From NCBI RefSeq assembly GCF_001194135.2, contig NC_068982.1:32326627-32390626 (forward strand): DNA of 64,000 nucleotides, written 5' to 3'. This DNA is from Octopus bimaculoides (Eukaryota). The stretch's first letter is position 1. Every line of letters starts with the position of its first letter. A program made the translations under genes and the position numbers. The notes below the pieces were generated by a model. That model had not been told where the DNA came from, did no database searches, and saw only the letters and a list, made by a program, of their open reading frames with translations. This document shows, in pieces, positions 12,107-48,037 of the stretch.

Positions 12107-13861
12107 CTGGAAAACAGTATTTGATTAACCTCACCTATTATTAGACATTTTGCTTTTTGTTGTTGTTGTTGTTGTTATTTAGGAAGAGTTTTCTTCTCAG
12201 AGTATTTTTGTTTGTTTGTTAGTGCATGTCTGTATGGTGCTGTTTTTAATTTTTTTTTTTTTTTATTTAATGAGAAGTTTGGAATAGTTTTGTCAACAAC
12301 ATAAGAGATAAAAATAATTTCCTACAGCAATGATAAATTAATCGTTTTTTTTAATATGGCGAGCTGACCAATTACTCTATTTGTTTTAATACCACAGCAC
12401 CTGGTCCTTTGGTTGTCTTTGGCAAAGTTCATTTAACTGAAAGCAGAAGGTCCAGCCCCTCTCTCCTCCGGATTCTTCTCCACCTGTATTTATTGTCATC
12501 TAGAAATTACTCTGTTCAGGCTGGACATCAGCAGCATCATTCTGGTGGAACCTGTTACTTCTCTCTTATTTGACTTATGAAAACAGAAAAATAGTTTTTG
12601 CTTATCTTTGAACAGCTAAAACTTAATTCTTCAAAGCATTTAAAATGACTGAATTAATTTATCATGGGCAATTTGTCCATCCTTTTATCAGTTCCATCAC
12701 CCTTTGCTCTTTTTTGACAAATAATTGTCTGTTACAGTGGCATGAGGATAGAAATATAGGAGCAGTCTATAGGTAATTGGATAAACACATTGTATGCTAT
12801 GGATATTTATTTTTATCAACCTTAGAATATTCGATGGAAAAGTTGAATTACACACAATTTGAAATAGAAAATACAGTATATTTTCTGGCATACAAGGCAA
12901 ATTTTTCAGACCAAAATTTACAGTAGGGCAATGCAGGTCATCTTATACATCAAAATGACTTTGGAACACCAAAACTTTCATGTGAAATGCACCAGGATTT
13001 GAAAAGATAGTGATGATGTTTTAATGTTAACTCTATATACAAGGCTGACTTGTATGCTGGAAAATACAGTAAAGAGAAATAACTGCATGCTGCAAGCCTT
13101 TAGTTCAAAATCTTACTGTTTTCTTTTTTTTTTTTTTTTACCAAATTCCATGGCTCTCTAAATAATGATATTGGTCATAGTGATTCCTAACATTGATATA
13201 AGGTCATAAATTTTCTGGTGAGGGTATAGTTACTTAACCCAGCATCAGTATACTGATGGTAATTATTTTGTTACTCTTGAAGTGCAAAAACTGGAGTAGG
13301 TCTTGATGTAGTGGATTTGAAACCAGTATGTAAGGAGAAATATAAGGTATTTTTGTAGTGTTCAACTATTTCTGCTTTTCAGTTATGAAAATAATAATCA
13401 ATTTTCTCATAAGCACTAAGCTAAAAATGTATGAGGCAGAAAATAACCAATTAAATTTATTATACAGGCAGAAGATCAGAAATTTAAGTGTAAGTGTTGG
13501 TTGATTAAATCTTGATTTCTATTTTATCTTATCAATTCCATGAGAATAAATGGTAAAGTTAACTTCAATAAGATTTGAAGTGAACACAAAGAGACAGAAA
13601 AGATATTGGTTTCAAATTCTGGAACAAGGCCAGCAATTTCAGGGGTGGGGCTAAGTCTATTACATCAACCAAAGTGCTCAACTGGTACTTATTTAATGAC
13701 CCTCTAAAGGATGAAAGACAAAGTTGACCTCAGCAGAATTTGAAGTCAGAACATAAAGACAAGTGAAATACTGGTAAGCATTTTGCCTGACATGCAAACA
13801 ATTTTGCCACTTGCTGCCATAGTAACAGAATAAAGATTACAAAGTATTTCGTCAGACACTA

Positions 13862-16764: not shown

Positions 16765-17140
16765 GGTGCATGGCTCAGGGATTAGAGCATCAGGCTCACA
16801 ATCATGAGGCAGTGAGTTCAATTCTCAAATCAGGTTGTGTGTTGTGTTCTTGAGCAAGACACTTTATTTCACTTCACTCAGCTGTAGAAATGAGTTGTGA
16901 TGTCACTGGTACTAAATTCTATCAACCTATGTCTTTCCTTTGGATAACATTGGTGGCATGGCTGGCGTNNNNNNNNNNNNNNNNNNNNNNNNNNNNNNNN
17001 NNNNNNNNNNNNGGGGGGGGGGGGGGAGGTTGATATGCATGGGCGACTACTGGTCTCCCATAAACAAACTTGCTCAGACTTGTGCCTTGGAGGGAAACTT
17101 TCTAGGTGCAATCCCATGGTCATTCCTGACCAAAGGGAGT
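16765..17140 (+). mobile_element. tRNA-type SINE, family D (head GCATGGCTCAGTGGTTAGAGC)
   Basis: It has a tRNA-like head and the body GTTGTGTTCTTGAGCAAGACACTTTATTTCAC. Homologous copies lie at 43680-44020 and 55805-55950. Confidence 0.85.
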
Positions 17141-17539
17141 GTTTGGGAAGTAGATTACATTGACTGCAATTCTCAACTTCAAAAGGATGAAAAGCAATGT
17201 CAGCCTCAGTGGAACTTGAACTCAGAACACAAAAAGCAAGAAAATATGCCACTAAGCATTTTGTCACAGATGCTAATAAATCTGCCAGCTTGAAACCTTA
17301 GAGAGAATAATCCTGAAATTTGTGGGGAGGAGACTAGTTGATTTCATCGATGCCAGTGTTTCACAGATACTTAATTTATCGACCCCAAAAGGATGAAAAG
17401 CAAAGTCGACCTTGGCAACATTTGAACTCAGTACATAGCAACGGAGGAAATACCACTAAGCATTTCGTCCAGCATGCTAACAATGACAACATCAATAGAA
17501 TTTTTATATTAGGATTAAGTCTTTGATTTTATCAAATAG

Positions 17540-17850
17540 TATTTGTGTCTTGCAAACAACTGGCTACCAGTCAAGAACTCCGCATACCGGAAGCCAGCAA
17601 GTGTATGGGGGTCATCAGGAGAGAATGCGCGCCATTTCGGGGCCTACCTCTCGATGGCATCAATGCGCACCGCCCCCCCCTCACTGATATGAGGCCCCGC
17701 TTGCTAGATCAACTGGTTATTAAAAACAAAGCTCAATATTTCTCTAGTCATCTCTCATCGTCTCTTTTTAACCAAATCCAGTCTCAGTGCACCACTTGTA
17801 CTTGCATTGTGATGTACTGCACACACCGAAACGTTTTTCAATCATTTTAA
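17540..17850. other. Isolated CpG/GC-rich island of unknown function
   Basis: CpGs are dense (CCGCATACCGG, TGCGCGCC, TTCGGGG, CACCGCCCCCCCC) within very AT-rich DNA, and the segment does not match any repeat family seen elsewhere in the window. Confidence 0.5.
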
Positions 17851-20228
17851 TCTGCAAACATATACTTAATAGGCAGCATAGCTTTGAATTTAAAATATTT
17901 TTGCTTAAAGCATCAAATACTTGGGGAAAATTTAGAGACAAAGTTGCTTGCAGCATATTATCATTTTCTTATCATCCAGTCAACATAAGGTGTGTAATAC
18001 AGGAAAGGAGTGGATGTTGGACAGGGATTTTTCATCTAATCCATTTTGGTAATATACACAATTTCTTATTTATATCACTTTCGACTTAGAGGCATCCTGC
18101 AAATTACCTGGAGCTTAGCACAGTGTTGATAATATTAAAACGTTCACAGCCATTACACCACTACAAACACTATTTGAGGTTGGTTGTTAAACCTGTGAGA
18201 AATCACACATCTTATAATGTGTGATGTTTTAGATGTTGTTTCAGGTATACTGAACCTGAACCTGAACAAAAGAGATAACATGGTCATGGTTAGCGTACCT
18301 TTCATCATAGGTCTACTCAAGTAGGCATGAGTTGGAGTTAAATGACAGCAATATACTAATAATCCTGACTAGTCTAGGCACAAAGCCTGAAATTTGTGGG
18401 GAGAGGATAGCTGTTTACATCCACTCCAGTATTCGACTGGTACTTTAGCCTCATGCTGGCAATGACAAGCGACTGAGACCTTTGGCAATATGCCATGCTT
18501 GAGAAGACCAATCAAGTCAAGTGAGATCGTAATCATGGCCGATGCCAGTGTTTTGTAATTGGCACCTGTGCCAGTGGCATGTAAAAAACACCTACTACAC
18601 TCTTACAGTGGTTAGCATTAGGAAGAGCATTCAGCTGTAGTAAACAGGCCAAATCAGATTGGAACCTGGTGCAGCTCCCCAGCTTACCAGCTTTCAGTCA
18701 AACTGTCCAACCCATGCCAGCATGGAAAACAGGTGCTAAAGGATGATGATGAATGTAAAGACGGGTGAAATACTGCTAAGCATTTTGCCTGGTGCGCTAA
18801 CGATTCTACCCACCTACTGCCTTCTGCAATATACTAATCATAATAATAATGGTAATTTCTCTTCTAGGAGACAGGTCAGAAAAATGTGTTTGGGAGCTAT
18901 GGAGTGCTTCAATATGAGGGTTTTGCTCTATAAGAGGACCTGCATGCTCCCTAACTACCTTGTTTTAGTCACATGTTCAATATCTGCCCATATATCTTTG
19001 AGGGCTCATTCCACTTGGGTGTATGTTGCTGTTTCCAGACATCAAGTTTTTACCAATGCACAGTAATACAGTACCATTTTCCAGGCAGCTGTTGCCAAAA
19101 TCTCAGCTGAGCCTTCTTCCCTTTTCCTTTCACAAGTTTTCCTACCTGATTAGGCATGCTTCTTATTAAGATGAGTGTGAAGTATTTTTATTCACTTTAC
19201 CACATTCCCAGCAAAATACTACCTACACATGGAATCACACCCACCATTTACTTTCTTGTCTTCATTATTGTTGCTTTGCTGCTGTCATTTTGTTGCTGCT
19301 GTTTTTATTACTACTGCCATGTTGTTACTGCTGCTACAGCTGCTGTTTTTGCTATAGTTGTTGTTGTTGTTACTGTTGTGATTGCTGTTCCAATATTTGT
19401 CAGTTTTGCCATTTTCACTGCTTACATGTGGCAGTCAAGTTGGTCGTGTTTAACTTGAGGTAAGAGGATCTACCATTAATCAATCTCTTCGTCAGAGAAA
19501 TTATTTCCCCCTCCCACCACTTCATACAGTTTAGTGGGTGTGAATTAAGCATTAAACAATTATGCTATGATGAAATTATTGCTGTAAGTGAGGTGCTCTT
19601 AAGCCCTACACTTACTGCCCCACCCCTTTTCACAGAGTGAAGTAGGGTTCTCCATTGAATGAAATATGAGAAAAAAACATTCAAACAAAAAGTATTTCCA
19701 ACAAAATCAACTAACCTTTTACAAGACAAAGACAAACACATCCAACAAATAATATTAATAATAAACGGAACAATAACAATGATAATAACAGGGATATTTT
19801 TAATGACAATATCATAGCTATTTATTTGCAAGACAGTAATGTATTGTAGCAACTGCTTTGTCAAATTGTTTGTAATTTTCGCCACCAGTTAAAGTTTTAC
19901 TTCAGGAATACAATGTCTCTTGTTATGGATGCATTCAGTTCCATAGCAACATCACCAGTTGCTGCTGTGTTATATGGCCACAACTAAAACAGTCAGTCTT
20001 CCACCAGAATATTATGTTCTTGCCACAATTGTTTTAGGTGCTAATTTTGCTATTAATAAATACATACATACATACATACGTGTGTGTGTGTGATTATTCG
20101 GTCTGAATTGAAACAAATGTAGGATTATAATATTCATGTTATAAAATAATAATAATGGTAGTAATAATATAATGCTATGTTAATAAATTAAAATGTGTCA
20201 ATCGTAAATCTCCATTTCTTTTTTCATT

Positions 20229-20260
<32 letters not shown>

Positions 20261-20322
20261 AGTACATATGTATGTGTGTATATATATATATGATCAATAA
20301 ATATAAGTATATATGTATTTGA

Positions 20323-20363
<41 letters not shown>

Positions 20364-21929
20364 TATATGTATGTAGGTGTATGTATGTATATATATATAT
20401 ATATATATAGTCATTTAATTCAATTGTACCTGCACTGAATCAAAGAGTTTACTATGATTGTTGACTCTCTTTAAAACATTCCTCTTGAAACAAACAAGTA
20501 AACTAGAGCAGCGGAGAATAATGGTCCTTCTTGACTAGACACATAGACTGATGATGTTTTATTCACCAGTTTGTGGCTCTAAACATTTCTTTAGCTCATC
20601 AAACATTGGAAACAGTTGATTGATCAATCAAAAGTGGTATTTCATTGGTCTATCGAAGTTTGTAAATATTCCCTTGGTTTATGACTTAAAACGTCAATTC
20701 TTTGTTGGTTTTGACATTATTTTAAAGACTGTTAAGCAACTCACTTGTAATGCTTTTCTTTTTTATGTTCTAGCAGAAAATATAAACCTACACACACACA
20801 CACACATATAGTCACACACATACAAAAACAGATATATGTTTTACCCAAAAAGCTGAATTACAATTAAAAAAATTGGTAGGTGTTATTGCCAGTAATATTA
20901 CACAAGTGAATTCAAAGACCTAGCCTCGAATGATGTAACAGGGCTATTAATAATGACAACAATTTGATGGTTGCAAACATTTCATTGATTTGTTGATAGT
21001 TGTAGACATTTTATTGGTCTCTGGGTGATTCTAGCCATTTGATTGTCTGAACATTGCTCTGATCATTTCCTTCCTTTATGGATGGCTAAACATATATTCA
21101 TATTTCTACAGTGCACCAGCCAATATTTTTGTACATATAGTAATGATATTTCTATAGCATATTTTCAATGAGTTTCTTTGAGTATTGAGACTTGTCAGTG
21201 TGAGCATTTTGTCAATGCTCACAAATGTTCGTGCATTTTACAATTCTGTTTATAAATGTAGTCTTTAGATTAGTTTGCTCATGGCTTTAGGTATATTTAT
21301 TTTGATATTGTTATATCTTCAACTGTTTCTCTGAGTTTATACGTATTTATACATGTGTGTATACTTGAGAGACATCACATCATCTTTTTTCTTTCATTTT
21401 GTCTTCTTTTATTTTCTCCTAGACATTATTCTACTTGATATGTTATTTCAAGCTCTAAGTGGACAATTATCAATATTTTAGTTGCTGTATTAAAATCAAT
21501 GAGAATATTTTGCAACTTTCAAGTTATATATCATACATGTTATGGTTATTTTCAAAGCTACATTGTTTCAGTCATTTTTGCCATCTCTTTGCCACTACAT
21601 ATAATAATCACATTGGTTGGTAATCTTTAATTGTTTTGCTAAGATAGCAGTGTTAAAAAAAGAGTTATGGTGAATATAAGGATGATTGTATCAGGATTGT
21701 TCTCTTTAGACAAACCATAAAGTAAAATTACACATGTAAGCTTGTAGCATATAGGACTGACTTCAATATATTACAGCCTAGCAGAATGAAAATTCGAAAT
21801 AATTTAAACTTAAACCTGCAAAGCTGTCAAACTTTGGATCTTGTAAACCACTCAGTATAACTTTATTAACACAATCAAGGCCAACTATCATTCTAATGGC
21901 AATGAATAATAATAATAACGATAACAATA

Positions 21930-22700
21930 ATTCAACTCTAGGCACAAGGCCTGAAATTTTGGGGAAGGGGGCTAGTTGATTACATCGGCCCCAGTGCACA
22001 ATTGGTACCTATTTCATCGACTCTCAAAAGGATGAAAGGCAAAGTTAACCTTGGTGGAATTTGAATATGATAATAATATTGTAACTTTAACATCGCACTA
22101 TCATCTTATAATCAAATTACTTTTTAGAACAAACTTCTAATTGTCTTATGTTTTTACCGACATCCTCTAGAACAATACTTTATGCAAAACCAAAAATATG
22201 GCTCCCTAGTCATAACACCAACTTGAAGTCTTTGGCCGAGACTTCAAAGCAAAAGCCAAACATATAATGATAATAATAATAATAATGATTGAAATTTTGG
22301 CACAAGGCCAACAATTTTGGGGGAAAGGGTAAGTCAATTACATCAACCCCTGTTCTCACCTAGTACTAATTTTATCGACCTTGAAAGGATGAAAGGCAAA
22401 GTTCACCTCAGCCAGATTTGATTTCAGAATGTAAAGATGGACAAAATGCTGCTAATCATTTATCCTGGTGTTGTAACAATTCTGCCAGCTCACCACATAA
22501 TAATAATGATAACAGTAAATATAATAATTTCTTTCATATTGTCTAAAACCACAAATTTCAAAGAGGGGTGTAGTCAGTTTATTTAACCCCAGTACTTGAA
22601 GCACAAGTATGAAAGGCAAATTTCAACAACAGCGTCCAAAGATATAAAAGCATTGAGACATAACTGTGTATTGCAAAGCATATTTATCCAGCACGGTACT
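21930..22700 (-). mobile_element. Three head-to-tail family B SINEs separated by (AAT)n
   Basis: The segments GGCACAAGGCC..AATTTTGGGG and GGATGAAAGGCAAAGTT recur at about 21940, 22300 and 22560. Confidence 0.8.
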
Positions 22701-22959
22701 GATTCTGAACCATCACATGTCTAATAATAATTAATAATAATAATAATAATGACTAAAAATAATAATGACAACAGCATTAATAGTATCAAAAACAATTTCA
22801 ATAATAGAAGAAAGGAAAATGTGAGATAAATGTGAGACAATACATAAGGAGCAAAAGAAAATGACACCTATATACCAATGCTGGATGTAGTGCCAGAGCA
22901 TGCTTACTGTATATATTGTGTTAATACAGTGCTAAATGCATGTCAACAAAATAAAATTA

Positions 22960-22972
22960 AATGTAAAACAAA

Positions 22973-23022
<50 letters not shown>

Positions 23023-23158
23023 AATGAATGTGTATATTATACACATTCTTTTGCTGGATACAGGCAACTAGCTGTGCATATATATATGTATATGTATCAA
23101 AAGTATATATCTGTGTGTGTAGAAATATATATATATCAAATGTTTATATATATGTATA

Positions 23159-23201
<43 letters not shown>

Positions 23202-23640
23202 ATATATATTATAAAATGTGCATATATAATTGCTTATATAATGTGTCTGTATATATACCAAATTTACATATATATATATGCATGTATGTATATATATATA
23301 TATATCAAATGGATGTATATATATGTGTGTGTGTATAAATATATGATGTATATTATATATATGCTATATAGATATATCAAATGTATATGTATTATATGTA
23401 TATAGTATATATTATATATGATATATATATTATACATAGTTATATGATATATACTATACACATATATATGATATATATTATACACATGTATATTATATAT
23501 ATCATACATATACATATATTATATATATAGTGTATATTTTATGCATATGTATATTATATATACCTTATACCCACACACACATACATACACATGAGAAAAC
23601 ATGTTTAAATACATATGTATGATGCATATGTATTTTAGTG
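22960..23640. repeat. Complex (TA)n/(TG)n/(CA)n microsatellite
   Basis: Low-complexity dinucleotide tract that produces the YIYI/CVCV pseudo-ORFs. Confidence 0.95.
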
Positions 23641-24037
23641 TTTATATCTGGATTGCTCCAAAATGCAGTCCTTTATTGGAGTCCTATCTCATTCTCTATT
23701 TCCTCCATTTTTTCTCCAATATTTAACTTATTTTTGACATGACATTTACTTTAGCAATGTTTCTATAAATAGACATTTTTCTTTTTTTTTTCCTTTTCCA
23801 TTTTGCATCCTAAAATGATTTCGTCAATTGTTTTTTGTTTCCAGTGTTTTCAATTTTTTGTTCACATTTTGTCTGTGATATAGTGAATATTATATATTTT
23901 TTTAATTTAAGAATGATTTAATTTTTTTTTTTCGATTTTATATTTTAACTTTTTAAATATTTTTTACTAATTTTTTTGCAATAAATCTGTGACAAAAACA
24001 AATTGAAAATTAAAAAAAAAGGAAAAAGGTTGGGCCA

Positions 24038-24201
24038 TCATGACCGTATACGGTTGCGCTTTCTAGAATTTATACTGATTCCTTGACATGTATTACAGCA
24101 GATTTGGTTGACGAAGACATGCTTGCAGCGACCTCTTTCCCTGAGCTTGCGACATAAGTTAAGATTTTCGTTTTCAGGTTTCCCACATTTAAAAGAATTG
24201 C
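24038..24201 (-). CDS. Terminal coding exon encoding a PLAC domain (ADAMTS/ADAMTS-like/papilin-type C-terminus)
   Basis: The acceptor ttctctttctttattaacag| is followed in phase 1 by NSFKCGKPENENLNLCRKLRERGRCKHVFVNQICCNTCQGISINSRKRNRIRS*. The spacing C-x10-C-x8-C-x8-CC-x2-C-QG matches PLAC (cf. the ADAMTS6/10 end ...CCKTCQGH, recalled). The ORF track missed it. Confidence 0.85.
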
Positions 24202-24469
24202 CTGTTAATAAAGAAAGAGAAAAGAATATACAGAAATGGTCTTAATAAATTAATTAAATTATAAATAAAACAGTTTTTGTTTGAGGGTCAGAAGGAAATG
24301 TTCTAAATTAATTTCAATGATTTTCAGAAAAAGAAACACAATTAGCTATTACTTTCTTAGTTGTTTTAAATGATTTGATGTAAAAAGCAAAATTTCAAAT
24401 GTCTCTTCACTAGATTTGATCATTCATTTAGTTATTATTATAATAAGTATAATTATTATTATTAAGGCA

Positions 24470-24880
24470 ACAAAGTCAGCAAGCTGACAGAATCATTAAC
24501 ACACCAGGCAAAATGCTTTGTGGAATTTCATTTGTCTTTACATTCCACTGATATCCACTTTGCATTTCCTCCTTTTGGGGTCAATAAAATGAGTACCAGT
24601 TGAGAATTGGAGTCGATGTAATTGACTCCTTCCCTTCCCTAAACTTACTGGCCTTTGCCAAAATTTGAAATCATTATTATTAAAGTAGTACACTGGACAA
24701 ATTAACTTAGCAGCACTTTACATTCTGAGTTCAAATTCTACCTAGGATGACATTGCCTTTCATCCTTTTGAGATTGATAAAATAAGTACTAGTTGAGCAC
24801 TGGGGCTGATGTAATCATCTAGCCTCCCTCTCCCTTAAAATCCTTAAAACTGCTGGCATTGTGCCAAAATTTGAAACAAT
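24470..24880 (+). mobile_element. Two tandem family B SINEs
   Basis: Both contain TTCTGAGTTCAAATT...GCCTTTCATCCTTT.G and end in GCCAAAATTTGAAA(ATT)n. Confidence 0.8.
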
Positions 24881-24904
24881 TGTTGTTGTTATTATTATTA
24901 TTAT

Positions 24905-25435
24905 CATGAGAGCAATTCATGTCATCAAAGTGACACTGTGGTAGAAATATACAAAGCCCAATATACCCATCATGACTACCCGTCTGATAAGGGTACACCA
25001 GGCACATGCATATGTGTGTGCGACATGGTGATCTCATATCAAGATAAACAGCACATTACCTTGCAGGTAGGATCCCGTTGGAATTTTCTTCAGGTCGAGT
25101 AGCCCATCCCAATCAAAAGGTCTCTAAATAAGGTTTGTTTAAGGGTGATGAATAAAACACCAATTTTTCCAGGAGTGAATTATTCAAACCACAACGAATT
25201 CCTCCCAACATGGCTATGATACCCTCCCACTACTCCTACTCATGATCAGAGATGCACATATCATCAGCCACTGATGGACATGCTCAACTAGTTATGGTCA
25301 GGCAACTGACAAGCAAATCTGTGGTACTACACAGAATATTTGTTGTAGCCCATCTTTTATAAGGAGACAAATCCTGTGCTTTATAACACTCCCAATTAGT
25401 TGAGATCAGAAGCCATGAGAGCCACTGCCTGGTAT
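24905..25435 (-). mobile_element. ~520-bp retroposon-like repeat, family E
   Basis: It is the reverse complement of the copy at 54794-55310 (CAGTGGCTCTCATGGCTTCTGATC...TCTGCTCAATACCACAGATTTGCTTGTCAG) and ends in (AAT)n. Confidence 0.8.
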
Positions 25436-27085
25436 CAACATTTTATTTGAAAGGTAAAGTTTCTAAACTAGATAAGGAAATACAAAAAAATGTAAGATAT
25501 GCAGATATTCACTTGATTGCTCTTTTTTTTTTAAAAAAAAAAAGGGTAAGAGCATATTACATAGTTTATCTCACATTTCACTTTGTCTGAAAATATGGAA
25601 TGGTCATAGCTGAAATGTCTTTGATCATAGAAATTCAAAATGAAGAGAAATCTTAAACTAAACAACAGCAACAACAACAAATTTAATATCTTCCAGACAT
25701 TGAATAAATTCAGGCAAAAGGGTATTAGTTTCTCACGAGACACAAACTAAGGAAATGAGAAGCATAATACCTATTAGCTTTATCAGCATACAATTGAAAT
25801 ACAGGCGTAGCTGTGTGGTTACAAAGTTAGCTTTGAAAATGCATGGTTCCAGGTTCGATCTCACTGCAAGACACCTTAAGCAAGTGTGTTCTAATATAGC
25901 ATTGGATCAGCCAAAGTTTTCTAAGTAGAACCAATAGGTAGAAACTGAAAAGTAGCCTACATACATGCATGCATGTATGCATGCATACATACATACATAC
26001 AAATCTGCGCATAAATACATATGCACATGCCTAGACATGAAAATATATACATAAAAACGCATCCATAAAACAAAAATACAAATCTGCGCATACACTAACA
26101 CCAAATACTGCACACACACACACACACACACAAATACCTAGATGATATTGATAAAAGTTCCAATGAAGGAGCCTTGAATCTATGTTAGAGTCCGGCTCTT
26201 TCTCTATGGACAAGAAATACAGAAATGAAACTGATTGATAACATACATACATACATGTGTGGTTGGGGTACATGAAAATCATCCTGAAAGTTCGCATTCA
26301 CATCTCCTGATCAAAGGAGGTTTCTTTGTTTACAATTACCACCAAGCAAAGACACGTGTAGTTTCAGTTTTTAGTGTGCAAAGAGTAGTGGAATAAAAAA
26401 AAAAAGATACCTTGGAAAACAGGTATGGATTGCCAAAAGGAAGACCATCGAGCCATAGAAAATCTACCTCAACAGATTTCATCTGACAGCTGGTAGCATG
26501 AAAAAATGGACACAAAACCACAAAAAGAAATAAAATGGCTTCAAGTGCAGACTGAAATTACTTCACAATCTTGGTTTTTGCAGAATCGTAGCTCTTACTC
26601 TGCTCGCATATGTTTCCTTCCTCAAGAAATATTGATTTCTAATACTGACACACAAATCTAAAAAATACTTCTAGTGAAAATATATAATCAATTGAATCTG
26701 ATACAAACTCAGTACATGTCTGATATATTTTGTTTGCTTTTGAGGCATAATATCTGAAGTCAATCATAATGGGGTTTGAAACTTTGAACACAGAATGTGG
26801 AGAGATGAAATTGAATACAATAAGACATTAATATAGCATTCTCTCTCTCTCATTTCCTTTTCTACCACTCTCCTGTAATGATATATTATATAGGGTGGTA
26901 GGAAAGACAGGTGCAGACATAACTGTCTGCTTAAGAAGTCTGCCTTGAAGTCACGTGGTTTCAGGTTCAATTCCCAAGTGTGGCACCTTGGAAAAGTGTC
27001 TTCTACTATATTCTCAAGCAAAGCAATGGCTTGAGAGTGAACCTGGTAGAGAGAAACTATGAGGATACCCTATATATATATATAA

Positions 27086-27124
<39 letters not shown>

Positions 27125-27341
27125 NNNNNNNNNNNNNNNNNNNNNNNNNNNNNNNNNNNNNNNNNNNNNNNNNNNNNNNNNNNNNNNNNNNNNNNNNNNN
27201 NNNNNNNNNNNNNNNNNNNNNNNNNNNNNNNNNNNNNNNNNNNNNNNNNNNNNNNNNNNNNNNNNNNNNNNNNNNNNNNNNNNNNNNNNNNNNNNNNNNN
27301 NNNNNNNNNNNNNNNNNNNNATACCCTATATATATATATAA

Positions 27342-27383
<42 letters not shown>

Positions 27384-27885
27384 GTACATACAGAGTCCAC
27401 CCAAAATATATATACAAGCTTCAGGTAAGGTAAAACATGTATAAACATTTTCATTCAGTGTTATGGCAGTTTGATAAAACATTGAAGGAGGTATCTGTAT
27501 TTATAGAGGTACTTATACAAGTTAAATATTTATACAGATTTTTCCTTTCCTGAACTGTGTATACATTTTTTTGGCATATTCTGTATATATTCATTCTACA
27601 GAAGATAAAGGAATTCTTGAATGCAGGATGGCTGTGAAAATCAAGTAAATACTCTTTAGAAGATGGAAAAAAATTGGCCAGCAGGCATCTATAGAGAAGT
27701 GAACTCAATACCTTGTAAACAGGTTTTAGAAGTGCTGAGTGAATTGATATTCTACAGAAAATAAAGGAGTTCTTGAACACAGGATGGCTGTGAAGACAGC
27801 TTAGAAAATCAGGTAAATACCTTTTAAAAGATGAAAGAAAGTGGCCATCAGGCCTCTACAGAGAGAATATATACACACACACACA

Positions 27886-29390
27886 CACACAACCACACTA
27901 ATAACTTAGGAGTGAAAAATTTAGGATTCTTGGTTTTCTGTGAATTAATTTTGATAAAACTTTTCTCAGTTGGTTTGCACACTATGGCAACACCATCATT
28001 ATGTTTCCATTATTTTGTGTAATGTCTTTTCTTTTTTAATTCAGATTCTTCAGTTTTTGGATGAACCATGCTAATAGCTTTTGAATGGAAATAGCCCATC
28101 TAGACATTTTATTTCAGAAAATGAAGGGTAATGATACATATTAAGCATACGTTGAGTATATATCTAACAGAAAACCATAATAATATTCTAACATTTATTG
28201 ACATCATGAATTATTTATCCACATGAGCACCAAGAGAAAAATGATCCGATTGCGAGACCTCCAAGACTGTGAAAGCTAGAGATCTAAGGAATATTGGCCG
28301 TGAGTTACAAGGGAAACCTGGACAAACAAGCAAAGACATTTTCACCATCTCTGGAATTTCTCATGTACCAAAAATCACAAGAAATTGCATCCTCAAGACC
28401 ATGGCTTCCATGCGAAAACTGCCTCCTCACAGGAGTTTGTGGCTTCAATGGCTCCCAAAAGTACATGACATTAGACTTGAGTTGTGTTCTGTTCACCAAC
28501 CAAACCAGGGCAAACCTTGACAAATCTGACAGTTTGACAAATGGTTGAGACTGTTTTGGAGATGAGCATCACCAATATTTATGACATCAACAATAGTATA
28601 GAGGAGTCAAGTTGTGGGCTGGTATCATTGGGTACAGACTTGTTGGCCCAGTTAGGGTGTCTGAAGAGGTTAAAGTGACCGCAGCTGCCTACTGCAATCC
28701 CCTGAAGGAGGTCTTAGATCCCTGACTTGATCACATACAGCTGTCACTTCTAAAGAATCTCATATTCGTGCATGACAATGCTCCCTCCAACTCTGCTAGA
28801 ATCACCCAAATATTCCTAGAGTCTAATGGCATACAAGGTGAAAGGTTGATGGTGTGGCCACTAGCATCTCCAGATCTCAACCCTGTCGAAAATCTTTGGT
28901 CCATCATTAGACAAAGTGTTTATGCTGATGGATGCCAATTTACATCAAAAGATGTCTTATGGACGACCATCAAAAGCTGTTGCAGAAGCAGTCTTGCCTG
29001 CTACTATTAAGAAATTGATGGATTCCATGAGTAACAGGGTTTTTGAAGTTCTCCCTCGAAATGGTACTCATGTAGCTAAATAATTCATTACATCAATAAA
29101 TGTAATAATATTATTATGGTTTTCTGTTAAAAATATACTCAATGTATGCTTAATATCTATCATTACTCTTCATTTTCTGAAAAAAATGTCTAGATGGGCT
29201 ATTTTTATTCAAAAGCGTGGTTCACCCAAAAACTGAAATAAAAAGGAGAGGACGTTAAACAGAATAATGAAAACATAACAATGGTGTTGCCATAATGTGA
29301 AGACCGGCCGGGGGGAAGTTTCATCAAAATGAATTCACAAAAAAACAAGAAATCCTAAATTTCACTCCTAAGCTGTTATGGTTCTGGGTA
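27886..29390 (+). mobile_element. Tc1-like DNA transposon, DD37E (TRT-type), internally deleted and defective
   Basis: Inverted repeats of about 320 bp lie at about 27890-28214 and 29077-29385. The transposase remnant includes VLFTNQTRANLD, GVKLWAGII, HDNAPSNSARITQIFLESNGIQGERLMVWPLASPDLNPVENLW (37 residues between D and E) and SMSNRVFEV, with stops and frameshifts. Confidence 0.92.
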
Positions 29391-30418
29391 TATGTGTGTG
29401 TGTGTGTATATATACATATATATGTATATATATATTTGAGTGTTGTGTTTGTCCCCCAGCACCAATTCACAACCAGTGTTAGTTTGTTTACATCTCCATA
29501 AATAAGTACTTCAGCTACTAGAATAAGTATCAGACTTAAAATTAAGTACTGGAGCCAGTTTGTTCAACTAATTTCCTTCAAAGATGTGCCCCAGTGTGGC
29601 CACATTCCAATAACTGAAAAAAGTAAAAGACACAACATACATACACATATCTATACATATATATATAGATTCTATAGGAACTAGAAGCTGCTTAGATTGG
29701 TGCATGGTATGTGTGGGTGTGTGTGAATATGCATGAGTCTACAGAGATTGACGTTCAAAGCTACAAACTCAGTAACAAACAACACTAAAAACAAAACTAA
29801 TTATAAATAAAGACATATGCAAGCCCCATGCAGCTTAATTACCAAGCAGAAAAGTTGACAGTTTCTGGTTACTAATCAGAGAGATCATTTAACAAAGCTA
29901 TAGTAAAGACCTTGGGAAAAAATTTACTCGTTTACTTTGTTTCATTCATATTAATTAACTTGTTCATATTTCTATTCTCTCAGACCACCTTATCACTCAC
30001 TTTCCCTCTCTATCTTTGTGTGTGTGTGTGAGAGAGAGAGAGAGATACATGCTTTATCTCTCTCTCTCTTTCCTAAACATATCATCCACACTTCCTTCTT
30101 ATTACTTTCCTCATCCATCTTTACTGTTCATTATTGTAGTAAATACAATAATGAACAGTGAGAAAATAGCTCAGCTACATCTTTTTTTTTTCTCAATTAC
30201 AACTGTATTGAAAGAAACTGCTAATAAACGTCGTCATCATCATCCCCACAACCATTACCATCTTCAATAACTATCATTACCACCACCACAATCACTTTCT
30301 TCATCATTATTATTACTTTTAAACACACATGTAAAATGTATACAGCTAGCTCGCTTCAGCTTTGTTTTATTTAGGTCTCGTTCGTTTGCTTCGGAGAGAT
30401 TAAAAACTNNNNNNNNNN

Positions 30419-30900
30419 TTAACATCCGCTTTCCATGCTGGCATGGGTTGGACAGTTTGACAGAGGATTGGCAAGCCAGGAGGCTGCACCAGGGTCCAAT
30501 CTGATCCGACAAGGTTTCTACAGCTGGATGCCCTTCCTAACGCCAACCATTCCAAGAGTGTCGTGGGTGCTTTTTACATGCCACCAGCACAGGTGCCAGT
30601 CAGGTGGTACTGGTATCGACCATGACAATGATTTCACTTGACTCAACAGGTCTTCTCAAGCACAGTATATTGCCCAACGATTGAAGGGTACTCTTAAATG
30701 GCCCGGTTATGTGACACTGGCATAGGCCACGACTACGGTATCATTTGGCATGCTGGATCTTCTCAAGCACGGCATATCTACAAAGGTCTCAGTCACTTGC
30801 CATTGCTTCCATGAGGCCCAATGTTTGAAGGTTGTGCTTCACGACTTCATCTCAGGTCTTCCTGGGTCTGCTTCAACACCTCATCCCAGGTCTTAAAATG
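30419..30900 (+). mobile_element. Family C retroposon (CCATGCTGGCATGGGTTGGAC...CAGCTGGATGCCCTTCCTAACGCCAACC)
   Basis: The same motifs recur at 18440-18750 (-), 33830-34200 and 53120-53490. Confidence 0.8.
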
Positions 30901-31153
30901 CAATTGAGATGCAGTTGAATTAGGTACTTAAATTAAAGCACCTTATTAGGTCAAAATAATTTGCACACCCAAACAATATCAGGTGAATATCAAACTCAGT
31001 GCAAGAGTAGTTGCACCGGATATTCTTGCAGTGTATGCAGACAACAAGACCCAACTTAGGGATGATATCCTCTCATGAATATTCAGACATGTACTTTATA
31101 TAAAAAATACTTTCTATAATATTTCCAAAGTGCAGAATGCAGGGTATGTGAAT

Positions 31154-31225
31154 AAAACATAAATGAGTAACAAAGATGTACAGGTGTCAATATACCTGTA
31201 CATCTTTGTTACTTATTTATGTTTT
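31154..31225. other. Near-perfect 32-bp stem hairpin
   Basis: AAAACATAAATGAGTAACAAAGATGTACAGGT-gtcaatat-ACCTGTACATCTTTGTTACTTATTTATGTTTT, with a single G:T mismatch in the stem. Confidence 0.9.
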
Positions 31226-31250
31226 TTATAGATATCTTAATAATACTAAA

Positions 31251-31801
31251 GTTGAGGCGCAATGGCCCAGTGGTTAGGACAGCGGACTCGCAGTCATAGG
31301 ATCGCGGTTTCGATTCCCAGACTGGGCGTTGTGAGTGTTTATTGAATAAAAACACCTAAAGCTCCACGAGGCTCCGGCAGGAGATGGTGGTGAACACTGC
31401 TGTACTCCTCCACCACAACTTTCTCTCACTCTTACTTTCTGTTTCTGTTGTGCCTGTAATTCAAAGGGTCAGCCTTGTCACACTGTGTCACGCTGAATAT
31501 CCCCGAGAACTACGTTAAGGGTACNNNNNNNNNNAGGCTCCGGCAGGGGATGGTGGTGAACCCTGCTGTACTCTTTCACCACAACTTTCTCTCACTCTTT
31601 CTTCCTGTTTCTGTTGTGCCTGTAATTCAAAGGGCCAGCCTTGTTGCACTGTCACGCTGAATATCCCCGAGAACTACGTTAAGGGTACACATGTCTGTGG
31701 AGTGCTCAACCACTTGCACATTAATTTCATGTGCAGGCTGTTCTGTTGATCGGATCAACTGGAACCCTCGATGTCGTAAGCGACGGAGTGCCAACAACAA
31801 C
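31251..31801 (+). mobile_element. Young tRNA(Arg)-like SINE with 12-bp target-site duplication
   Basis: The head GGCGCAATGGCCCAGTGGTTAGGACAGCGGACTCGCAGTCATAGGATCGCGGTTTCGATTCC has A and B boxes and a TCG anticodon-like loop. The tail is (CAA)n. The TSD AATAATACTAAA lies at 31239-31250 and 31802-31813. The internal duplication across the 10-N gap is probably an assembly artefact. Confidence 0.88.
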
Positions 31802-32097
31802 AATAATACTAAAACTCTAGATGTTTGTTTGTTCCCAAAATATCTCAGAAATAGTATGTTTTATCTTAATTTTTTTTTTACATATATATTTTCATACTTA
31901 CTTTATGCAGTGCAGTGTGAGGTTTCATGATATTTGGATCTCTATTTATTAATGAAATCGGTTAAACACAATTTTTATTTGTTATTTCTTGACAGAAACC
32001 TCCCCCCCCCCCAGCTTCCATGACATCAACACACATTACAAACACATATAATGAATGTCATGGCGTGTGAATCAACACAAACACACACATGGTATCA

Positions 32098-32318
32098 AGG
32101 CGGCGAGCTGGCAGAAACGTTAGCACGTTGGGCGAAATGCTTAGCGGTATTTCATCTGCCGCTAGGTTCTGAGTTCAAATTCCGCCGAGGTCAACTTTGC
32201 TTTTCATCCTTTTGGGAGTCAATTAAATAAGTACCAGTTACACACTGGGGTCAATATAATCGACTTAATCCGTTTGTCCCCTCTGTGTGTAGCCCCTTGT
32301 GGGTAGTAAAGAAATAAC
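32098..32318 (+). mobile_element. Young family B SINE (CpG-intact)
   Basis: AAGGCGGCGAGCTGGCAGAAACGTTAGCACG...TTCTGAGTTCAAATTCCGCCGAGGTC...GCCCCTTGTGGGTAGTAAAGAAATAA. Confidence 0.9.
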
Positions 32319-32450
32319 ACATACGCTATCTGTGACATATACATACACATAATCTTCATGATTTTACTCTATCAACTTTTTTACATACACACACACTGAC
32401 ATAAAGAAACATCTTTTTTGCGAAGATTACTTATCGTTTCATCATTTCAG

Positions 32451-32519
32451 ATTTTATTCTATTTCATTCGACATTTGTAATCTCTTTGTTGTTCTGTCTA
32501 TCCATGAGTACTTTACCAG
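32451..32519 (+). other. Candidate 69-nt exon with signal-peptide-like reading (unverified)
   Basis: It reads cgtttcatcatttcag|...TTACCAG|gtaacg. The phase 1-1 reading is (D)FILFHSTFVISLLFCLSMSTLP(G). No partner exons were found. Confidence 0.2.
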
Positions 32520-32545
32520 GTAACGCTAGGTAGTAAGTCTAGTAT

Positions 32546-33284
32546 NNNNNNNNNNNNNNNNNNNNNNNNNNNNNNNNNNNNNNNNNNNNNNNNNNNNNNN
32601 NNNNNNNNNNNNNNNNNNNNNNNNNNNNNNNNNNNNNNNNNNNNNNNNNNNNNNNNNNNNNNNNNNNNNNNNNNNNNNNNNNNNNNNNNNNNNNNNNNNN
32701 NNNNNNNNNNNNNNNNNNNNNNNNNNNNNNNNNNNNNNNNNNNNNNNNNNNNNNNNNNNNNNNNNNNNNNNNNNNNNNNNNNNNNNNNNNNNNNNNNNNN
32801 NNNNNNNNNNNNNNNNNNNNNNNNNNNNNNNNNNNNNNNNNNNNNNNNNNNNNNNNNNNNNNNNNNNNNNNNNNNNNNNNNNNNNNNNNNNNNNNNNNNN
32901 NNNNNNNNNNNNNNNNNNNNNNNNNNNNNNNNNNNNNNNNNNNNNNNNNNNNNNNNNNNNNNNNNNNNNNNNNNNNNNNNNNNNNNNNNNNNNNNNNNNN
33001 NNNNNNNNNNNNNNNNNNNNNNNNNNNNNNNNNNNNNNNNNNNNNNNNNNNNNNNNNNNNNNNNNNNNNNNNNNNNNNNNNNNNNNNNNNNNNNNNNNNN
33101 NNNNNNNNNNNNNNNNNNNNNNNNNNNNNNNNNNNNNNNNNNNNNNNNNNNNNNNNNNNNNNNNNNNNNNNNNNNNNNNNNNNNNNNNNNNNNNNNNNNN
33201 NNNNNNNNNNNNNNNNNNNNNNNNNNNNNNNNNNNNNNNNNNNNNNNNNNNNNNNNNNNNNNNNNNNNNNNNNNNNNNNNNNNN

Positions 33285-33286
<2 letters not shown>
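32546..33286. other. Assembly gap (741 N); other gaps at 11057-11187, 16969-17012, 27125-27320, 30409-30418, 31525-31534, 58889-59419, 62719-62746
   Basis: Runs of N, most of them bordered by microsatellites or duplicated flanks. Confidence 0.99.
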
Positions 33287-33353
<67 letters not shown>

Positions 33354-34446
33354 AAACAACAGAGGCACAAGTAAGGCTCTGTGGTTAAAAAGTTTGTTTC
33401 TCAACCACATAGTTTGAGGTTCAGTCCCACTGCGTAGTACCTTGAGCAAGTGTCTTCTACTATAGCCCTGGGTCAACCAGTCTTGCAAGTGGATTTAGTA
33501 GACAGAAAGAAACCGACAGAAGCCTGTGATATTAGTGTGTGTGTGTGTTGACTTGTCTTGATATTGCACGAGTTATAAATGAATGTCACTGTCATATAAG
33601 CAGTGTCATCCCTTTCCAATATTCTGTGAAAGCATATCTGGCTGTTGGGGTGGGAATATTATGTTGCTTAGAAACATATGAAGGTTGATAACAAGAAGTG
33701 CATTTGGCTTTAGAAAAATCTGCCCCATTAAATTGTAATACATGCAAACAAAAATTTGAAAGCTAAAATGATAATATATACACACACAAACATGTATACA
33801 TGTATATACACATATGCACATACAAGATCATCCTTTTATGCTCATTTTTCATGCTGGCATGGGTTAGACAGTTTGACCAGAGTTGGCAAGTAGGAGAGCT
33901 GCACCAGGTTCCAATCTGATTTCGGTTGGTTTCTATTGCTGGATGCCCTTCCTAACACCAACCACTTTACAGAGTCTGCTGGGTGCTTTTAACTGGTAAG
34001 AGCACTTTTACGTGTTACCAGCACAAGTACTTTTTATGTGGCACTGGCATGTGACTCTTGCAGGCCAATCTTCTTCATCAGGAGGAGTGGCATTAACACT
34101 TCTGCCATGGAGGATGAGTCTTTTTGCTTGAGTACAGCAAGGCACCAGATATCTCAGTTCTTTGCCATCTTCCTCCATAGGGTTTAGTGTACTTCGTCCC
34201 ATGTCTTCCATGTATACATGTGTATACACATGCGCAAATATACATACACACATGTCCACTGAGTTTTAGCACAGTTTTTCTCTACAAAATTTCACTCGCA
34301 TGTCTTTGGATAGTAAAAAAAACCCATGGTGGAATGCCATGGAACTGAGCCTAGGACCCTGTGACTGCAGACAGAATTTTAATAAGAAAGAGACAAGGAA
34401 GAGAGAAAGAGAAAGATAAATGGAAGAATTGAAGAAGTCTACTTAC

Positions 34447-34744
34447 GATTTTCTTCTTGTTTCATGCCACAGACATAACAAAGGTTTTGTACCCAGGTGA
34501 TCATGTCTTCTTCTGTCTCGGTGGCCAAAAAGTACACTCTTTCTTTTCCTTTGTGGATTGTCTTGATCGAGAGTACATTCGGGTATTCTCCGACATCCAG
34601 CGATTCGATTATCTGTTCACATTGCTCCAGATCAATGTGACCTTTCCGTTTGCGGCACTGCTCATCTCCGTAGTAGTTTAGTACAAACTGTTCAGGTAAG
34701 CTAGCTGCTGGCTTGAACAACACAAAAAAACGCCGCTTCCATTT
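34447..34744 (-). CDS. Gab: Internal exon encoding most of the PH domain of a Gab/Daughter-of-sevenless (GRB2-associated binder) adaptor
   Basis: It reads atattttccag|AAA TGG AAG CGG...GAA AAT C|gtaagt (298 nt, phase 0 to 1) and translates to KWKRRFFVLFKPAASLPEQFVLNYYGDEQCRKRKGHIDLEQCEQIIESLDVGEYPNVLSIKTIHKGKERVYFLATETEEDMITWVQNLCYVCGMKQEEN. This matches Dos (PEQFCLEYY..RKLKGVIDLDQCEQ) and GAB1 (WKRRWFVL, IDLNLCEQ, FYLVADSEEEMNKWV), recalled from memory. Confidence 0.93.
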
Positions 34745-36085
34745 CTGGAAAATATAAAAAAAGGAGGTTAGATATTATTATTGTTGTTGTTATTTCATAT
34801 ACACACAACAGATTAAACTGTTGGAAAAAGAAAAATTCCTAATATCAGGTTACAACAAGTAACCTTAGATGCCAAGAACCTTCCTATGTATCCTGGCTGT
34901 CTCTAATAATACTGTCTTCTGGAGCAGCACTAAACTAGGTTTTATGCATATTTCCTCTATGCACCAACTGAAATTTTTAGGGATAGTTCCTAATGCACCT
35001 ATAACTACAGGGTGCTTTTAACATTGCATTTGGTACTTTGTAATTTTCTCTCTACCTCTCACACTGACTTTCTCACCATTTGAGACCGTAAAGTCAATTA
35101 CCTGGCACTTTCTGTTCTCTTTGTCTATTATTACTATGGCAGCAAGCTGGTAGAATCGTTAGCACACTGGATGAAATGTTTAGCGGTATTTCACCCATTG
35201 CTACGTTCTGAGTTCAAATTCCGCCCAGGTTGACACTGCCTTTCATCTTTTTGGGGTCAATAAATTAAATACCAGTGGAACATTGGGGTCGATGTAACCG
35301 ACTCATTTCTTCTCCTAAAATGGTTGCCCTTGTGGCAAAATTTGAAATTATTATTATTATAATTATTATTATTACTATTAAAGTAATAACTTTACTTTTG
35401 TTGCATGTTTTCACTGCACACCAAAATGCAGCTTTGTTTGCTTTGGATATGTGCAACCTTTCATTTTGTTTTGTTAATATGAAGACACTTCCTGTTTTCA
35501 ATCACTACATCCAAATATTATTAAGGGAGCTGTGAAGGTAGAAAGAAAGATACAGCACCCACCTCCCCCTTAAATGCTTTGAAAGTTGGATAAAGTAGTG
35601 GAATTGGGCCAACTTATGTATGCAATTGTAGGTTGGTGGTAAGAATTAGGAAAAGGTACCTGCTTCTGATGTATCTAGGTATTCCTGTGTTGTGTGTGGT
35701 GTGCTCCGAGTCACCTTTCTATTTTGAAGATCCTTCTCTCTTGTTATATTGGATCTTTATTATTACTACATTTATTGTTTTCTGGTAAGGATGTCTTTAC
35801 AGCTACATTGTTAATCTCCCACTGTTTCCTGTTTCTTTTTCTGCTTAACCTATGCACTCTACTCCTGAGCCCTTGTAGCGAATAAAAGAAATCATTTATT
35901 ATTATCATTGATTTGGTTCCTATTTCTAGCCGGTTGGGTGACCATGGTTGTGTGAGTAAGAAGTTCACTTTGCAACCATCTGGCTTCAGGTTTGCCTTGT
36001 GTTTGTGTCTTCTATACTGTGTCTTGAGGTAATCAATGTCTTGCAAGTAAATTTGGTAGACAAAGACTGTGTAGAAGCCAAGCCT

Positions 36086-47706: not shown

Positions 47707-47747
<41 letters not shown>

Positions 47748-47994
47748 GTGTGTGTGTGTGTGTGTATATATATATAGTCAAATCGTCCAACCCATGCTAG
47801 CATGGAAAGCGGACGTTTAACGATGATGATGATGATATATATAAATGTATATAATTATATATATAATCTAATGTGAACAATATTTAAAATATGAGGTATT
47901 AATAGTTCTTTTGCTAGAGACACTGAGATTAGACAGATTTATATAATGTGCCTTGTCTCCAAGCAATCTTTCGTTTATATAGTTTACAGAACAC

Positions 47995-48037
<43 letters not shown>

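What the first reader, a model, noticed from the sequence alone, without database searches (positions are those of the whole stretch)
24038..34744. Gab PH exon and ADAMTS-type PLAC terminal exon on the same strand with no partner exons: interleaved genes or a PH-PLAC fusion
Seen: the PH exon ends in phase 1 (AAT C|) and the next recognisable exon 10.2 kb downstream, PLAC, starts in phase 1 (|GC AAT). Direct splicing would give an in-frame ...KQEENRNSFKCGKP...CCNTCQG...*. I found no TSP1-type exons in the 40 kb upstream of PLAC and no Gab Pro/Tyr-rich exons in the 34 kb downstream of PH. Established: Gab is a cytosolic adaptor with a long tail, whereas PLAC ends secreted proteins. Inference: (a) same-strand nested or interleaved genes, (b) a short membrane-binding PH plus Cys-cluster isoform (possible dominant-negative Gab) made by exon capture, or (c) scaffold mis-join or exons lost in gaps. 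Phase compatibility alone arises by chance about one time in three.
Basis: partly seen in the sequence, partly recalled or inferred. Interest (0 to 1): 0.7.

Follow-up and report, generated by a model that had tools for sequence, protein, structure and literature searches.

The report
Two unrelated exons, not a fusion
The two exons are real, but one is exon 2 of a Gab/DOS signalling adaptor gene and the other is the last exon of a secreted ADAMTS7/12-like gene, so their closeness reflects overlapping genes or a scaffolding error rather than a new PH-PLAC fusion protein.

Summary
Both exons lie on the minus strand at the stated coordinates, with the stated phases. The PH exon (34744..34447) is a clear Gab/DOS-type PH exon. 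Its acceptor and its phase-1 donor are conserved in other spiralian genomes.

The PLAC-like exon (24201..24038) fails Pfam's threshold. It is still a real coding exon: it is 76% identical to the C-terminus of a spliced transcript from another species, including the stop position. In that transcript it follows three TSP1_ADAMTS repeats and a Thr-rich mucin-like linker, which is ADAMTS7/12-like. Codon differences are mostly synonymous.

No TSP1 exon and no Gab tail exon is present anywhere in the 64 kb. In other species Gab exon 2 is followed within 1-5 kb by a ~1 kb Pro/Tyr-rich exon, with no PLAC exon.

The in-frame PH-to-PLAC junction is therefore a coincidence of two ancestral phase-1 boundaries. 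What remains is either real same-strand interleaving of two giant-intron genes or misplacement of a contig across the four gaps. I could not decide between these, because no independent assembly or same-species transcript was reachable. A functional PH-PLAC isoform is unlikely (about 7%).

The parts
34447..34744 (-). Exon 2 of a Gab/DOS-type adaptor gene. It encodes most of the PH domain (99 codons plus 1 base) and ends in phase 1.
   Evidence: Pfam PH at E=4e-15. Ten homologous single-exon ORFs from other genomes share the same boundaries. A relative shows 79% nucleotide identity confined to 34758..34442.
34745..34775 (-). Polypyrimidine tract and AG acceptor of the PH exon.
   Evidence: Sequence ...cctcctttttttatattttccag|AAA. 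The 'FQ' read-through that precedes KWKRR in nine homologous genomic ORFs shows the acceptor is at a conserved position.
34441..34446 (-). GTAAGT donor of the PH exon (phase 1).
   Evidence: A phase-1 donor sits at the same position in L001, L005 and L008.
24038..24201 (-). Terminal coding exon of an ADAMTS7/12-like (or ADAMTSL) gene. It encodes a six-Cys PLAC-like module plus a basic tail, with stop TGA at 24040..24038, and starts in phase 1.
   Evidence: E=1.4e-17 and 77% identity to the last 52 residues of P0011. P0011 comes from a spliced transcript contig in which three TSP1_ADAMTS repeats precede it. Of 54 codons, 12 are identical, 29 differ only synonymously and 13 differ non-synonymously; differences by codon position are 13/8/36. 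Pfam PLAC and ADAMTS_C match only below threshold.
24202..24240 (-). Polypyrimidine tract, branch-point-like ttattaac and AG acceptor of the PLAC-like exon.
   Evidence: Sequence accatttctgtatattcttttctctttctttattaacag|GC. Similarity to the orthologous transcript stops at this boundary.
23901..23922 (-). Two ATTAAA hexamers 116 and 132 nt after the stop. These are candidate polyadenylation signals. An AATAAA follows at 23677.
   Evidence: This is a consensus match only, in A/T-rich sequence, and is not evidence of use.
27125..27320 (.). Assembly gap (196 N) between the contig carrying the PLAC exon and the next contig. It sits inside a microsatellite.
   Evidence: The 60 nt on either side are 98% identical. 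The microsatellite type is common in the window, so this is weak support for continuity.
30409..30418 (.). Assembly gap (10 N) at the 5' edge of a SINE-like repeat copy.
   Evidence: The copy that starts at 30419 lacks only about 13-17 nt compared with four other copies.
31525..31534 (.). Assembly gap (10 N) whose flanks repeat each other.
   Evidence: 31369-31524 and 31535-31688 are 93% identical. This could be an unmerged overlap of contig ends or two copies of a dispersed repeat.
32546..33284 (.). Assembly gap (739 N), 1.16 kb downstream of the PH exon.
   Evidence: The flanks hold unrelated interspersed repeats, so there is no information on continuity.

Best explanation
The interval holds one exon from each of two unrelated genes on the minus strand.

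The PH exon is exon 2 of a Gab/DOS adaptor gene. Its exon 1 lies beyond the high-coordinate end of the window. Its long Pro/Tyr-rich exon lies more than 34 kb downstream, beyond the low-coordinate end.

The PLAC-like exon is the last coding exon of a secreted ADAMTS7/12-like gene. Its TSP1-repeat exons lie more than 40 kb upstream, beyond the high-coordinate end.

Taking the scaffold at face value, the last intron of the ADAMTS-like gene contains Gab exon 2, and Gab intron 2 contains the ADAMTS-like terminal exon. That is a same-strand interleaved gene pair with giant introns. Each exon normally splices to its own gene's partners.

The in-frame PH-to-PLAC junction arises because both boundaries are ancestrally phase 1. 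Any PH-PLAC transcript would be a mis-splicing or premature-termination by-product, not a designed protein.

Shown: the identity and reality of both exons, their natural partners in other species, and the absence of those partners from the window. Inferred: that the partners exist outside the window in this genome, and that the scaffold order is right.
For: PH exon:
- Pfam PH at E=4e-15.
- Homologous exons with identical boundaries in 10 other genomes.
- In four long spiralian contigs it is followed 1-5 kb downstream by a 318-397 aa Pro/Tyr-rich ORF. That ORF carries YDIPP repeats, a YMNL motif and a PQRPRKP motif, as expected for a Gab tail.
- The phase-1 donor is conserved.

PLAC-like exon:
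- It is the C-terminus of P0011 at E=1.4e-17.
- P0011 lies on a 1337-nt transcript contig whose ORF is open to the 5' end. The ORF reads mucin-like linker, then three TSP1_ADAMTS repeats (E=2e-29), then the PLAC-like tail, with the stop at the same position.
- A genomic exon from a third species shows the same TSP1-mucin-TSP1 layout.
- The pattern of codon differences shows purifying selection.
- ADAMTS7/12 are the only ADAMTS clade with a mucin domain among the C-terminal repeats, and they end in a six-Cys PLAC (PMC4448532).

Continuity: three of the four gaps have flanks compatible with short true gaps.
Against: - Same-strand overlaps in which an intron of one gene holds a spliceable exon of another are selected against because of mis-splicing (PMC3814207).
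- A strong acceptor plus a stop and poly(A)-like signals inside Gab intron 2 would act like a gene trap on a broadly needed adaptor.
- The 298-nt PH exon would shift the frame of the ADAMTS-like mRNA if it were included.
- The two exons sit on different contigs joined through four gaps, and no independent assembly or same-species transcript could be reached.
- The partner exons were not seen in this genome.
Confidence: 0.45

Rival explanations
1. Scaffold error. The two exons belong to two separate genes, which may be tandem neighbours. The 10-kb contig carrying the PLAC exon (17013-27124), or one of the small repeat-bounded contigs between the exons, was placed in the wrong order or at the wrong locus by short-read scaffolding. 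The genes are not really interleaved.
For: Four gaps separate the exons, and every join falls at a microsatellite or an interspersed repeat. The flanks of gap 31525-31534 are only 93% alike, and part of that sequence belongs to a dispersed family with another copy at 1355-1471. The join may therefore link two different repeat copies. The assembled arrangement is one that selection disfavours (PMC3814207). None of the partner exons of either gene is in the 64 kb.
Against: I found no positive sign of a mis-join. Three gaps look like ordinary short gaps. Most gap sizes are specific estimates (196, 739, 44, 131 and so on), which usually come from read pairs that span them. That last point is an inference about assembler practice and was not tested.
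Confidence: 0.37
2. Exon capture. The scaffold is right and the PH exon is regularly spliced to the PLAC-like exon. The product is a short Gab isoform, consisting of the PH domain plus a 54-residue Cys-rich basic tail, that has a function such as dominant-negative membrane binding.
For: The junction is in frame. The donor (GTAAGT) and the acceptor (a long pyrimidine tract plus AG) look strong. The stop and ATTAAA signals follow. I recognised no other exon between them.
Against: - The PLAC-like exon is conserved as the end of a secreted TSP1-repeat protein, and the stop position is conserved with it.
- No protein with a PH-PLAC junction appeared in either search.
- Other spiralian Gab loci have no PLAC-like sequence within 10 kb.
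- Both phases are ancestral.
- A six-Cys disulfide module would not fold in the cytosol (established knowledge).
Confidence: 0.07
3. Orphan copy. One of the two exons is a duplicated stray copy, moved by segmental duplication or a transposon, and no longer belongs to any functional gene. The working copy lies elsewhere.
For: Neither exon has any partner in 64 kb. The interval is rich in mobile-element remnants, including a mariner DDE_3 fragment and several SINE-like families.
Against: Both exons keep intact reading frames, splice sites and, for PLAC, the stop codon. Both show protein-level conservation far above nucleotide-level conservation. The window holds no second copy and no flanking duplication.
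Confidence: 0.07

Closest known systems
Gab family adaptors (vertebrate GAB1-4, Drosophila DOS, C. elegans SOC-1)
   Same: The PH-domain sequence matches, including WKRRxFVL, IDLxxCEQ and the YFLA..E.EM..WV..C..CG ending. It aligns to human GAB1 residues 26-121, starting at W26. The phase-1 donor is shared with other spiralian Gab loci, where a Pro/Tyr-rich docking exon follows.
   Different: Only one exon is present here. The exon encoding the first PH strand and the whole docking tail are absent from the window, so a complete Gab gene is not demonstrated in this sequence.
ADAMTS7/ADAMTS12 (mucin-domain ADAMTS proteases ending in a PLAC module) and ADAMTS-like proteins
   Same: The orthologous transcript and a genomic exon from related species show TSP1, a Thr-rich mucin-like linker, three TSP1_ADAMTS repeats and a six-Cys C-terminal module. 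This is the layout described for ADAMTS7/12 (PMC4448532).
   Different: The Cys module scores below Pfam's PLAC threshold. There are three rather than four repeats after the linker. The protease, disintegrin and spacer parts were not seen, so an ADAMTS-like protein without a protease domain is not excluded.
Same-strand nested or overlapping gene pairs (as catalogued in Drosophila and mammals)
   Same: As assembled, an intron of one gene holds a spliceable exon of another gene on the same strand.
   Different: Known cases are mostly complete, often single-exon, genes inside a host intron. Here the exons of two multi-exon genes would alternate, which is rarer and expected to be costly (PMC3814207).
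Gene-trap cassettes and intronic polyadenylation isoforms
   Same: A strong acceptor, a short ORF with a stop and poly(A)-like signals inside an intron would truncate the host mRNA after its PH exon. This is how the PH-PLAC product would arise if it arises at all.
   Different: No transcript evidence. The captured exon is a conserved part of another gene, not a dedicated alternative last exon.

Membership tests
Gab/DOS adaptor | N-terminal PH domain of the Gab type | tested here: met
   Pfam PH at E=4e-15. 61-88% identity to exons that sit in Gab-like loci of other genomes.
Gab/DOS adaptor | Long Pro/Tyr-rich tail with SH2 and SH3 docking motifs in the same gene | tested here: inconclusive
   Present 1-5 kb downstream of the PH exon in L005-L008. 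Absent from the 34 kb downstream in the window by tblastn and HMM. It may lie outside the window.
Gab/DOS adaptor | Upstream exon encoding the first PH strand (GWLxK motif) | tested here: not met
   No convincing match on the minus strand at 34745-64000; the one hit at 43675 (GWISR) looks like chance. It may lie outside the window.
PLAC domain (Pfam PF08686) | Six conserved cysteines ending in CC-x2-C | tested here: met
   C-x10-C-x8-C-x8-CC-x2-C, read directly. All six Cys are conserved in P0011.
PLAC domain (Pfam PF08686) | Score above Pfam's gathering threshold | tested here: not met
   14.4 bits against 26.4, E=0.063. The orthologous tail does not reach it either.
PLAC domain (Pfam PF08686) | C-terminal position after TSP1 repeats in a secreted protein | tested here: met
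   Met in the orthologous transcript L009/P0011. Not visible in the window itself.
ADAMTS7/12-like | Mucin-like linker between the C-terminal TSP1 repeats | tested here: met
   Thr-rich linker in L009 and in genomic exon L010. This applies to the orthologues, not to the window.
ADAMTS7/12-like | Reprolysin-type metalloprotease, disintegrin-like, Cys-rich and spacer domains | not testable with these tools
PH-PLAC fusion or chimeric gene | Compatible phases and an open frame across the junction | tested here: met
   298 + 164 nt gives 153 codons plus a stop. This is expected by chance one time in three, and both phases are ancestral.
PH-PLAC fusion or chimeric gene | The two parts are joined or adjacent in other species | tested here: not met
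   PLAC is joined to TSP1 repeats in L009. There is no PLAC-like sequence within 10 kb of the Gab PH exon in L005-L008. No fused protein appeared in the searches.
PH-PLAC fusion or chimeric gene | Transcript spanning the 34447^24201 junction | not testable with these tools
   No reads or transcripts of this species were reachable.
Same-strand interleaved gene pair | Partner exons of both genes flank each other on one continuous molecule | not testable with these tools
   The partners are outside the window, and four gaps lie between the two exons.

The most novel reading that the evidence does not exclude
The scaffold is correct, and the terminal exon of a neighbouring ADAMTS7/12-like gene sits inside Gab intron 2 as a natural gene trap. 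A regulated share of Gab pre-mRNA is spliced from the PH exon into it. This both lowers full-length Gab and produces a PH-only adaptor with a Cys-rich basic tail that competes for membrane phosphoinositides.
Probability: 0.07. Interest if true: 0.6.

Novelty: new member of a known kind. Interest (0 to 1): 0.28.

Why it matters
The practical value is for annotation. Automated gene models in this region could wrongly fuse a cytosolic adaptor's PH exon to the tail of a secreted protease, and this analysis shows why they should be kept apart. If the interleaving proves real, it would be a clear example of two multi-exon genes sharing giant introns on one strand in a large-intron genome. It would then be a natural test case for how splicing avoids cross-gene junctions. 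If it proves to be a mis-join, it marks a local error in the assembly.

Tried and rejected
- The word-index homologue search with the PLAC peptide returned no candidates, although the exhaustive search later found P0011. The first negative was therefore a limit of the index.
- PDB sequence searches gave nothing useful for either exon.
- Exact-product look-ups of the window's own PH ORF found no other assembly of this species.
- An exact-DNA scan and a peptide-pattern scan of metagenome contigs found nothing.
- A paper search for the run accessions, meant to name the source species, found nothing.
- A motif search for Gab exon 1 (GWLxK) found nothing convincing.
- Rfam and tRNA scans of the window were empty.
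- I considered that the missing Gab exons hide in the gaps and rejected it. The gaps total about 955 N, and the tail exon alone is about 1 kb in other species.
- I considered that the PLAC-like ORF is a chance Cys-rich ORF and rejected it, because of the E=1.4e-17 orthologue and the synonymous-dominated divergence.


Full report
**What is there**

Both features are on the minus strand.

The PH exon runs 34744..34447 (298 nt). It follows a pyrimidine tract and AG (tatattttccag|AAATGG), ends AAAATC|gtaagt, and leaves one base for the next codon.

The PLAC-like exon starts at 24201, after ctttctttattaacag, with two bases that complete a codon. It runs to a TGA at 24040..24038.

The window has eight N-gaps. 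Four of them (27125-27320, 30409-30418, 31525-31534 and 32546-33284) lie between the two exons, and none interrupts either exon.

**The PH exon is a Gab/DOS exon**

- It matches Pfam PH at E=4e-15.
- A search of 5.8 billion proteins returned ten hits at 61-88% identity. All are single genomic ORFs that begin with the read-through 'FQ' of the same acceptor and stop just past the same donor.
- In four long contigs from other spiralian genomes, the exon is followed 1-5 kb downstream on the same strand by a 318-397 aa ORF. That ORF is rich in Pro and Tyr, with repeated YDIPP, a YMNL and a PQRPRKP motif. From established knowledge, this is the docking tail of Gab adaptors.
- The exon aligns to residues 26-121 of human GAB1 at 35% identity, E=3e-16.
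- The donor sits after the first base of the codon following CGMK(Q/P)EE(N/S) in a relative and in two of the distant loci. The phase-1 end is therefore ancestral.
- A closer relative aligns at 79% nucleotide identity only across 34758..34442, that is, across the exon alone.

**The PLAC-like exon is real, but Pfam alone does not show it**

- Pfam gives PLAC E=0.063 and ADAMTS_C E=0.044, both far below threshold. With hundreds of ORFs in the window, such scores are expected by chance.
- The word-index search found nothing.
- The exhaustive HMMER search of 1.84 billion representatives found P0011 at E=1.4e-17. The match covers its last 52 residues at 77% identity.
- P0011 comes from a 1337-nt contig of a sequencing run (SRR27666078). 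Its reading frame is open to the 5' end.
- That frame reads a Thr-rich linker, three TSP1_ADAMTS repeats (E=2e-29), the Cys module and a stop at the same position as in the window. Since these modules are contiguous, the contig is a spliced mRNA.
- A genomic exon from a third species carries half a TSP1 repeat, the Thr-rich linker and the start of the next repeat, and ends at a gtaagt donor.
- Between the window and the transcript, 12 of 54 codons are identical, 29 differ only synonymously and 13 change the residue. The differences number 13, 8 and 36 at codon positions 1, 2 and 3. That is the signature of purifying selection on this frame.
- All six cysteines are kept.
- According to the ADAMTS review, only ADAMTS7 and ADAMTS12 have a mucin domain among the C-terminal repeats, and they end in a six-Cys PLAC module (PMC4448532). 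The gene is therefore ADAMTS7/12-like in its 3' half. The protease half was not seen.

**Partner exons are absent from the window**

- No CSxTCG or WxxW-C motif occurs in any frame.
- Pfam scans of minus-strand ORFs of 40 aa or more from about 18.6 to 53 kb found only the PH domain. Scans of ORFs of 58 aa or more, on the minus strand at 53-64 kb and on the plus strand, added only a decayed mariner-type DDE_3 fragment.
- tblastn with the full transcript ORF and with the mucin exon hits only 24199..24038.
- tblastn and a profile of the spiralian Gab tail exon find nothing. The longest minus-strand ORF is 182 aa, too short for a tail exon of about 1 kb.
- No exon-1 motif was found.

**Why the fusion reading fails**

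- Each exon has a demonstrated natural partner in other species: TSP1 repeats for PLAC, and the Pro/Tyr-rich exon for PH.
- No PLAC-like sequence lies within 10 kb of the PH exon in four other Gab loci, and no TSP1 sequence either.
- No protein with a PH-PLAC junction turned up in either large search.
- Both phase-1 boundaries are ancestral, so the frame match is the expected one-in-three coincidence.
- A disulfide module at the end of a cytosolic PH protein would not fold normally (established knowledge).

**What explains the juxtaposition**

Two readings remain, and I could not separate them.

1. *Real interleaving.* The scaffold is right, and two multi-exon genes with introns of more than 34 and more than 40 kb alternate exons on one strand. 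The gap flanks speak mildly for continuity. The same microsatellite sits on both sides of 27125-27320. The contig ends at 31525-31534 repeat each other over about 155 nt at 93% identity. The SINE-like copy that starts at 30419 lacks only about 15 nt.
2. *Scaffold error.* Same-strand overlaps with spliceable exons are depleted in well-studied genomes, and this is attributed to mis-splicing (PMC3814207). Here the PLAC exon would act as a gene trap in Gab, and the 298-nt PH exon would frameshift the ADAMTS-like mRNA. Every join sits at a repeat, and the 93% flanks may be two different repeat copies.

My estimates are about 0.45 for real interleaving, 0.37 for a scaffold error, 0.07 for a functional captured isoform and 0.07 for an orphan duplicated exon.

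No independent assembly or transcript of this species was reachable.

**Novelty and interest**

Both exons are new members of well-known families, and neither the families nor the possible arrangements are new in kind. The finding is useful for annotation and flags a region to check in a better assembly. I rate its interest as modest.

Noticed in passing
window 28245-29080 (+): Decayed Tc1/mariner-type transposase remnant inside the interval between the two exons. One ORF (28726-29007) matches Pfam DDE_3 at E=7e-8. Neighbouring ORFs in other frames look like frameshifted pieces of the same element.
   Followed up: partly
window 30419-30677; also 18481-18739 (-), 3537-3738 (-), 53136-53329, 33846-33993: A SINE-like interspersed repeat of about 200-260 nt, with copies 76-83% identical to one another. 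One copy starts right at the 10-N gap and lacks only about 15 nt.
   Followed up: partly
window 32098-32266 and more than 20 other places (e.g. 53944-54111, 35138-35303, 54328-54499, 13652-13818): A very abundant repeat of about 170 nt, 70-84% identical between copies. Its translation recurs as ...SSNSAEVNFAFHPFRVDK... in many minus-strand ORFs.
   Followed up: no
window 31369-31524 and 31535-31688: The two sides of a 10-N gap are 93% identical over about 155 nt. Part of this sequence also resembles 1355-1471 (74%). This is either an unmerged contig overlap or two copies of a dispersed repeat brought together by scaffolding.
   Followed up: partly
window 27065-27124 / 27321-27380, and 9800-9886, 20226-20417, 23141-23305, 47709-48201: The same microsatellite type occurs at many sites and borders the 196-N gap on both sides. 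Several other gaps also abut simple repeats.
   Followed up: no
window 57305-58479 (-): The longest minus-strand ORFs (159-182 aa) are Pro/His/Thr-rich low-complexity sequence upstream of the PH exon. The surrounding 56-58 kb has strong AT skew, and there is no Pfam match. They look like translated simple sequence, not an exon.
   Followed up: partly
L005-L008 (ENA contigs), 1-5 kb downstream of the PH exon: The Gab tail exon is well conserved among these spiralian genomes, including SQKGDSHLSQG, EPYMNLP, EHKYINA, DVYLPMDP, EVEYTDMSGKS and PPQRPRKPG. This could serve as a profile for finding Gab tails in other molluscs.
   Followed up: partly
method note: The word-index homologue search reported no candidate for the PLAC peptide. 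Yet P0011, found by the exhaustive search, shares the 11-residue run FKCGKPENENL with it. The index evidently does not hold every word.
   Followed up: no
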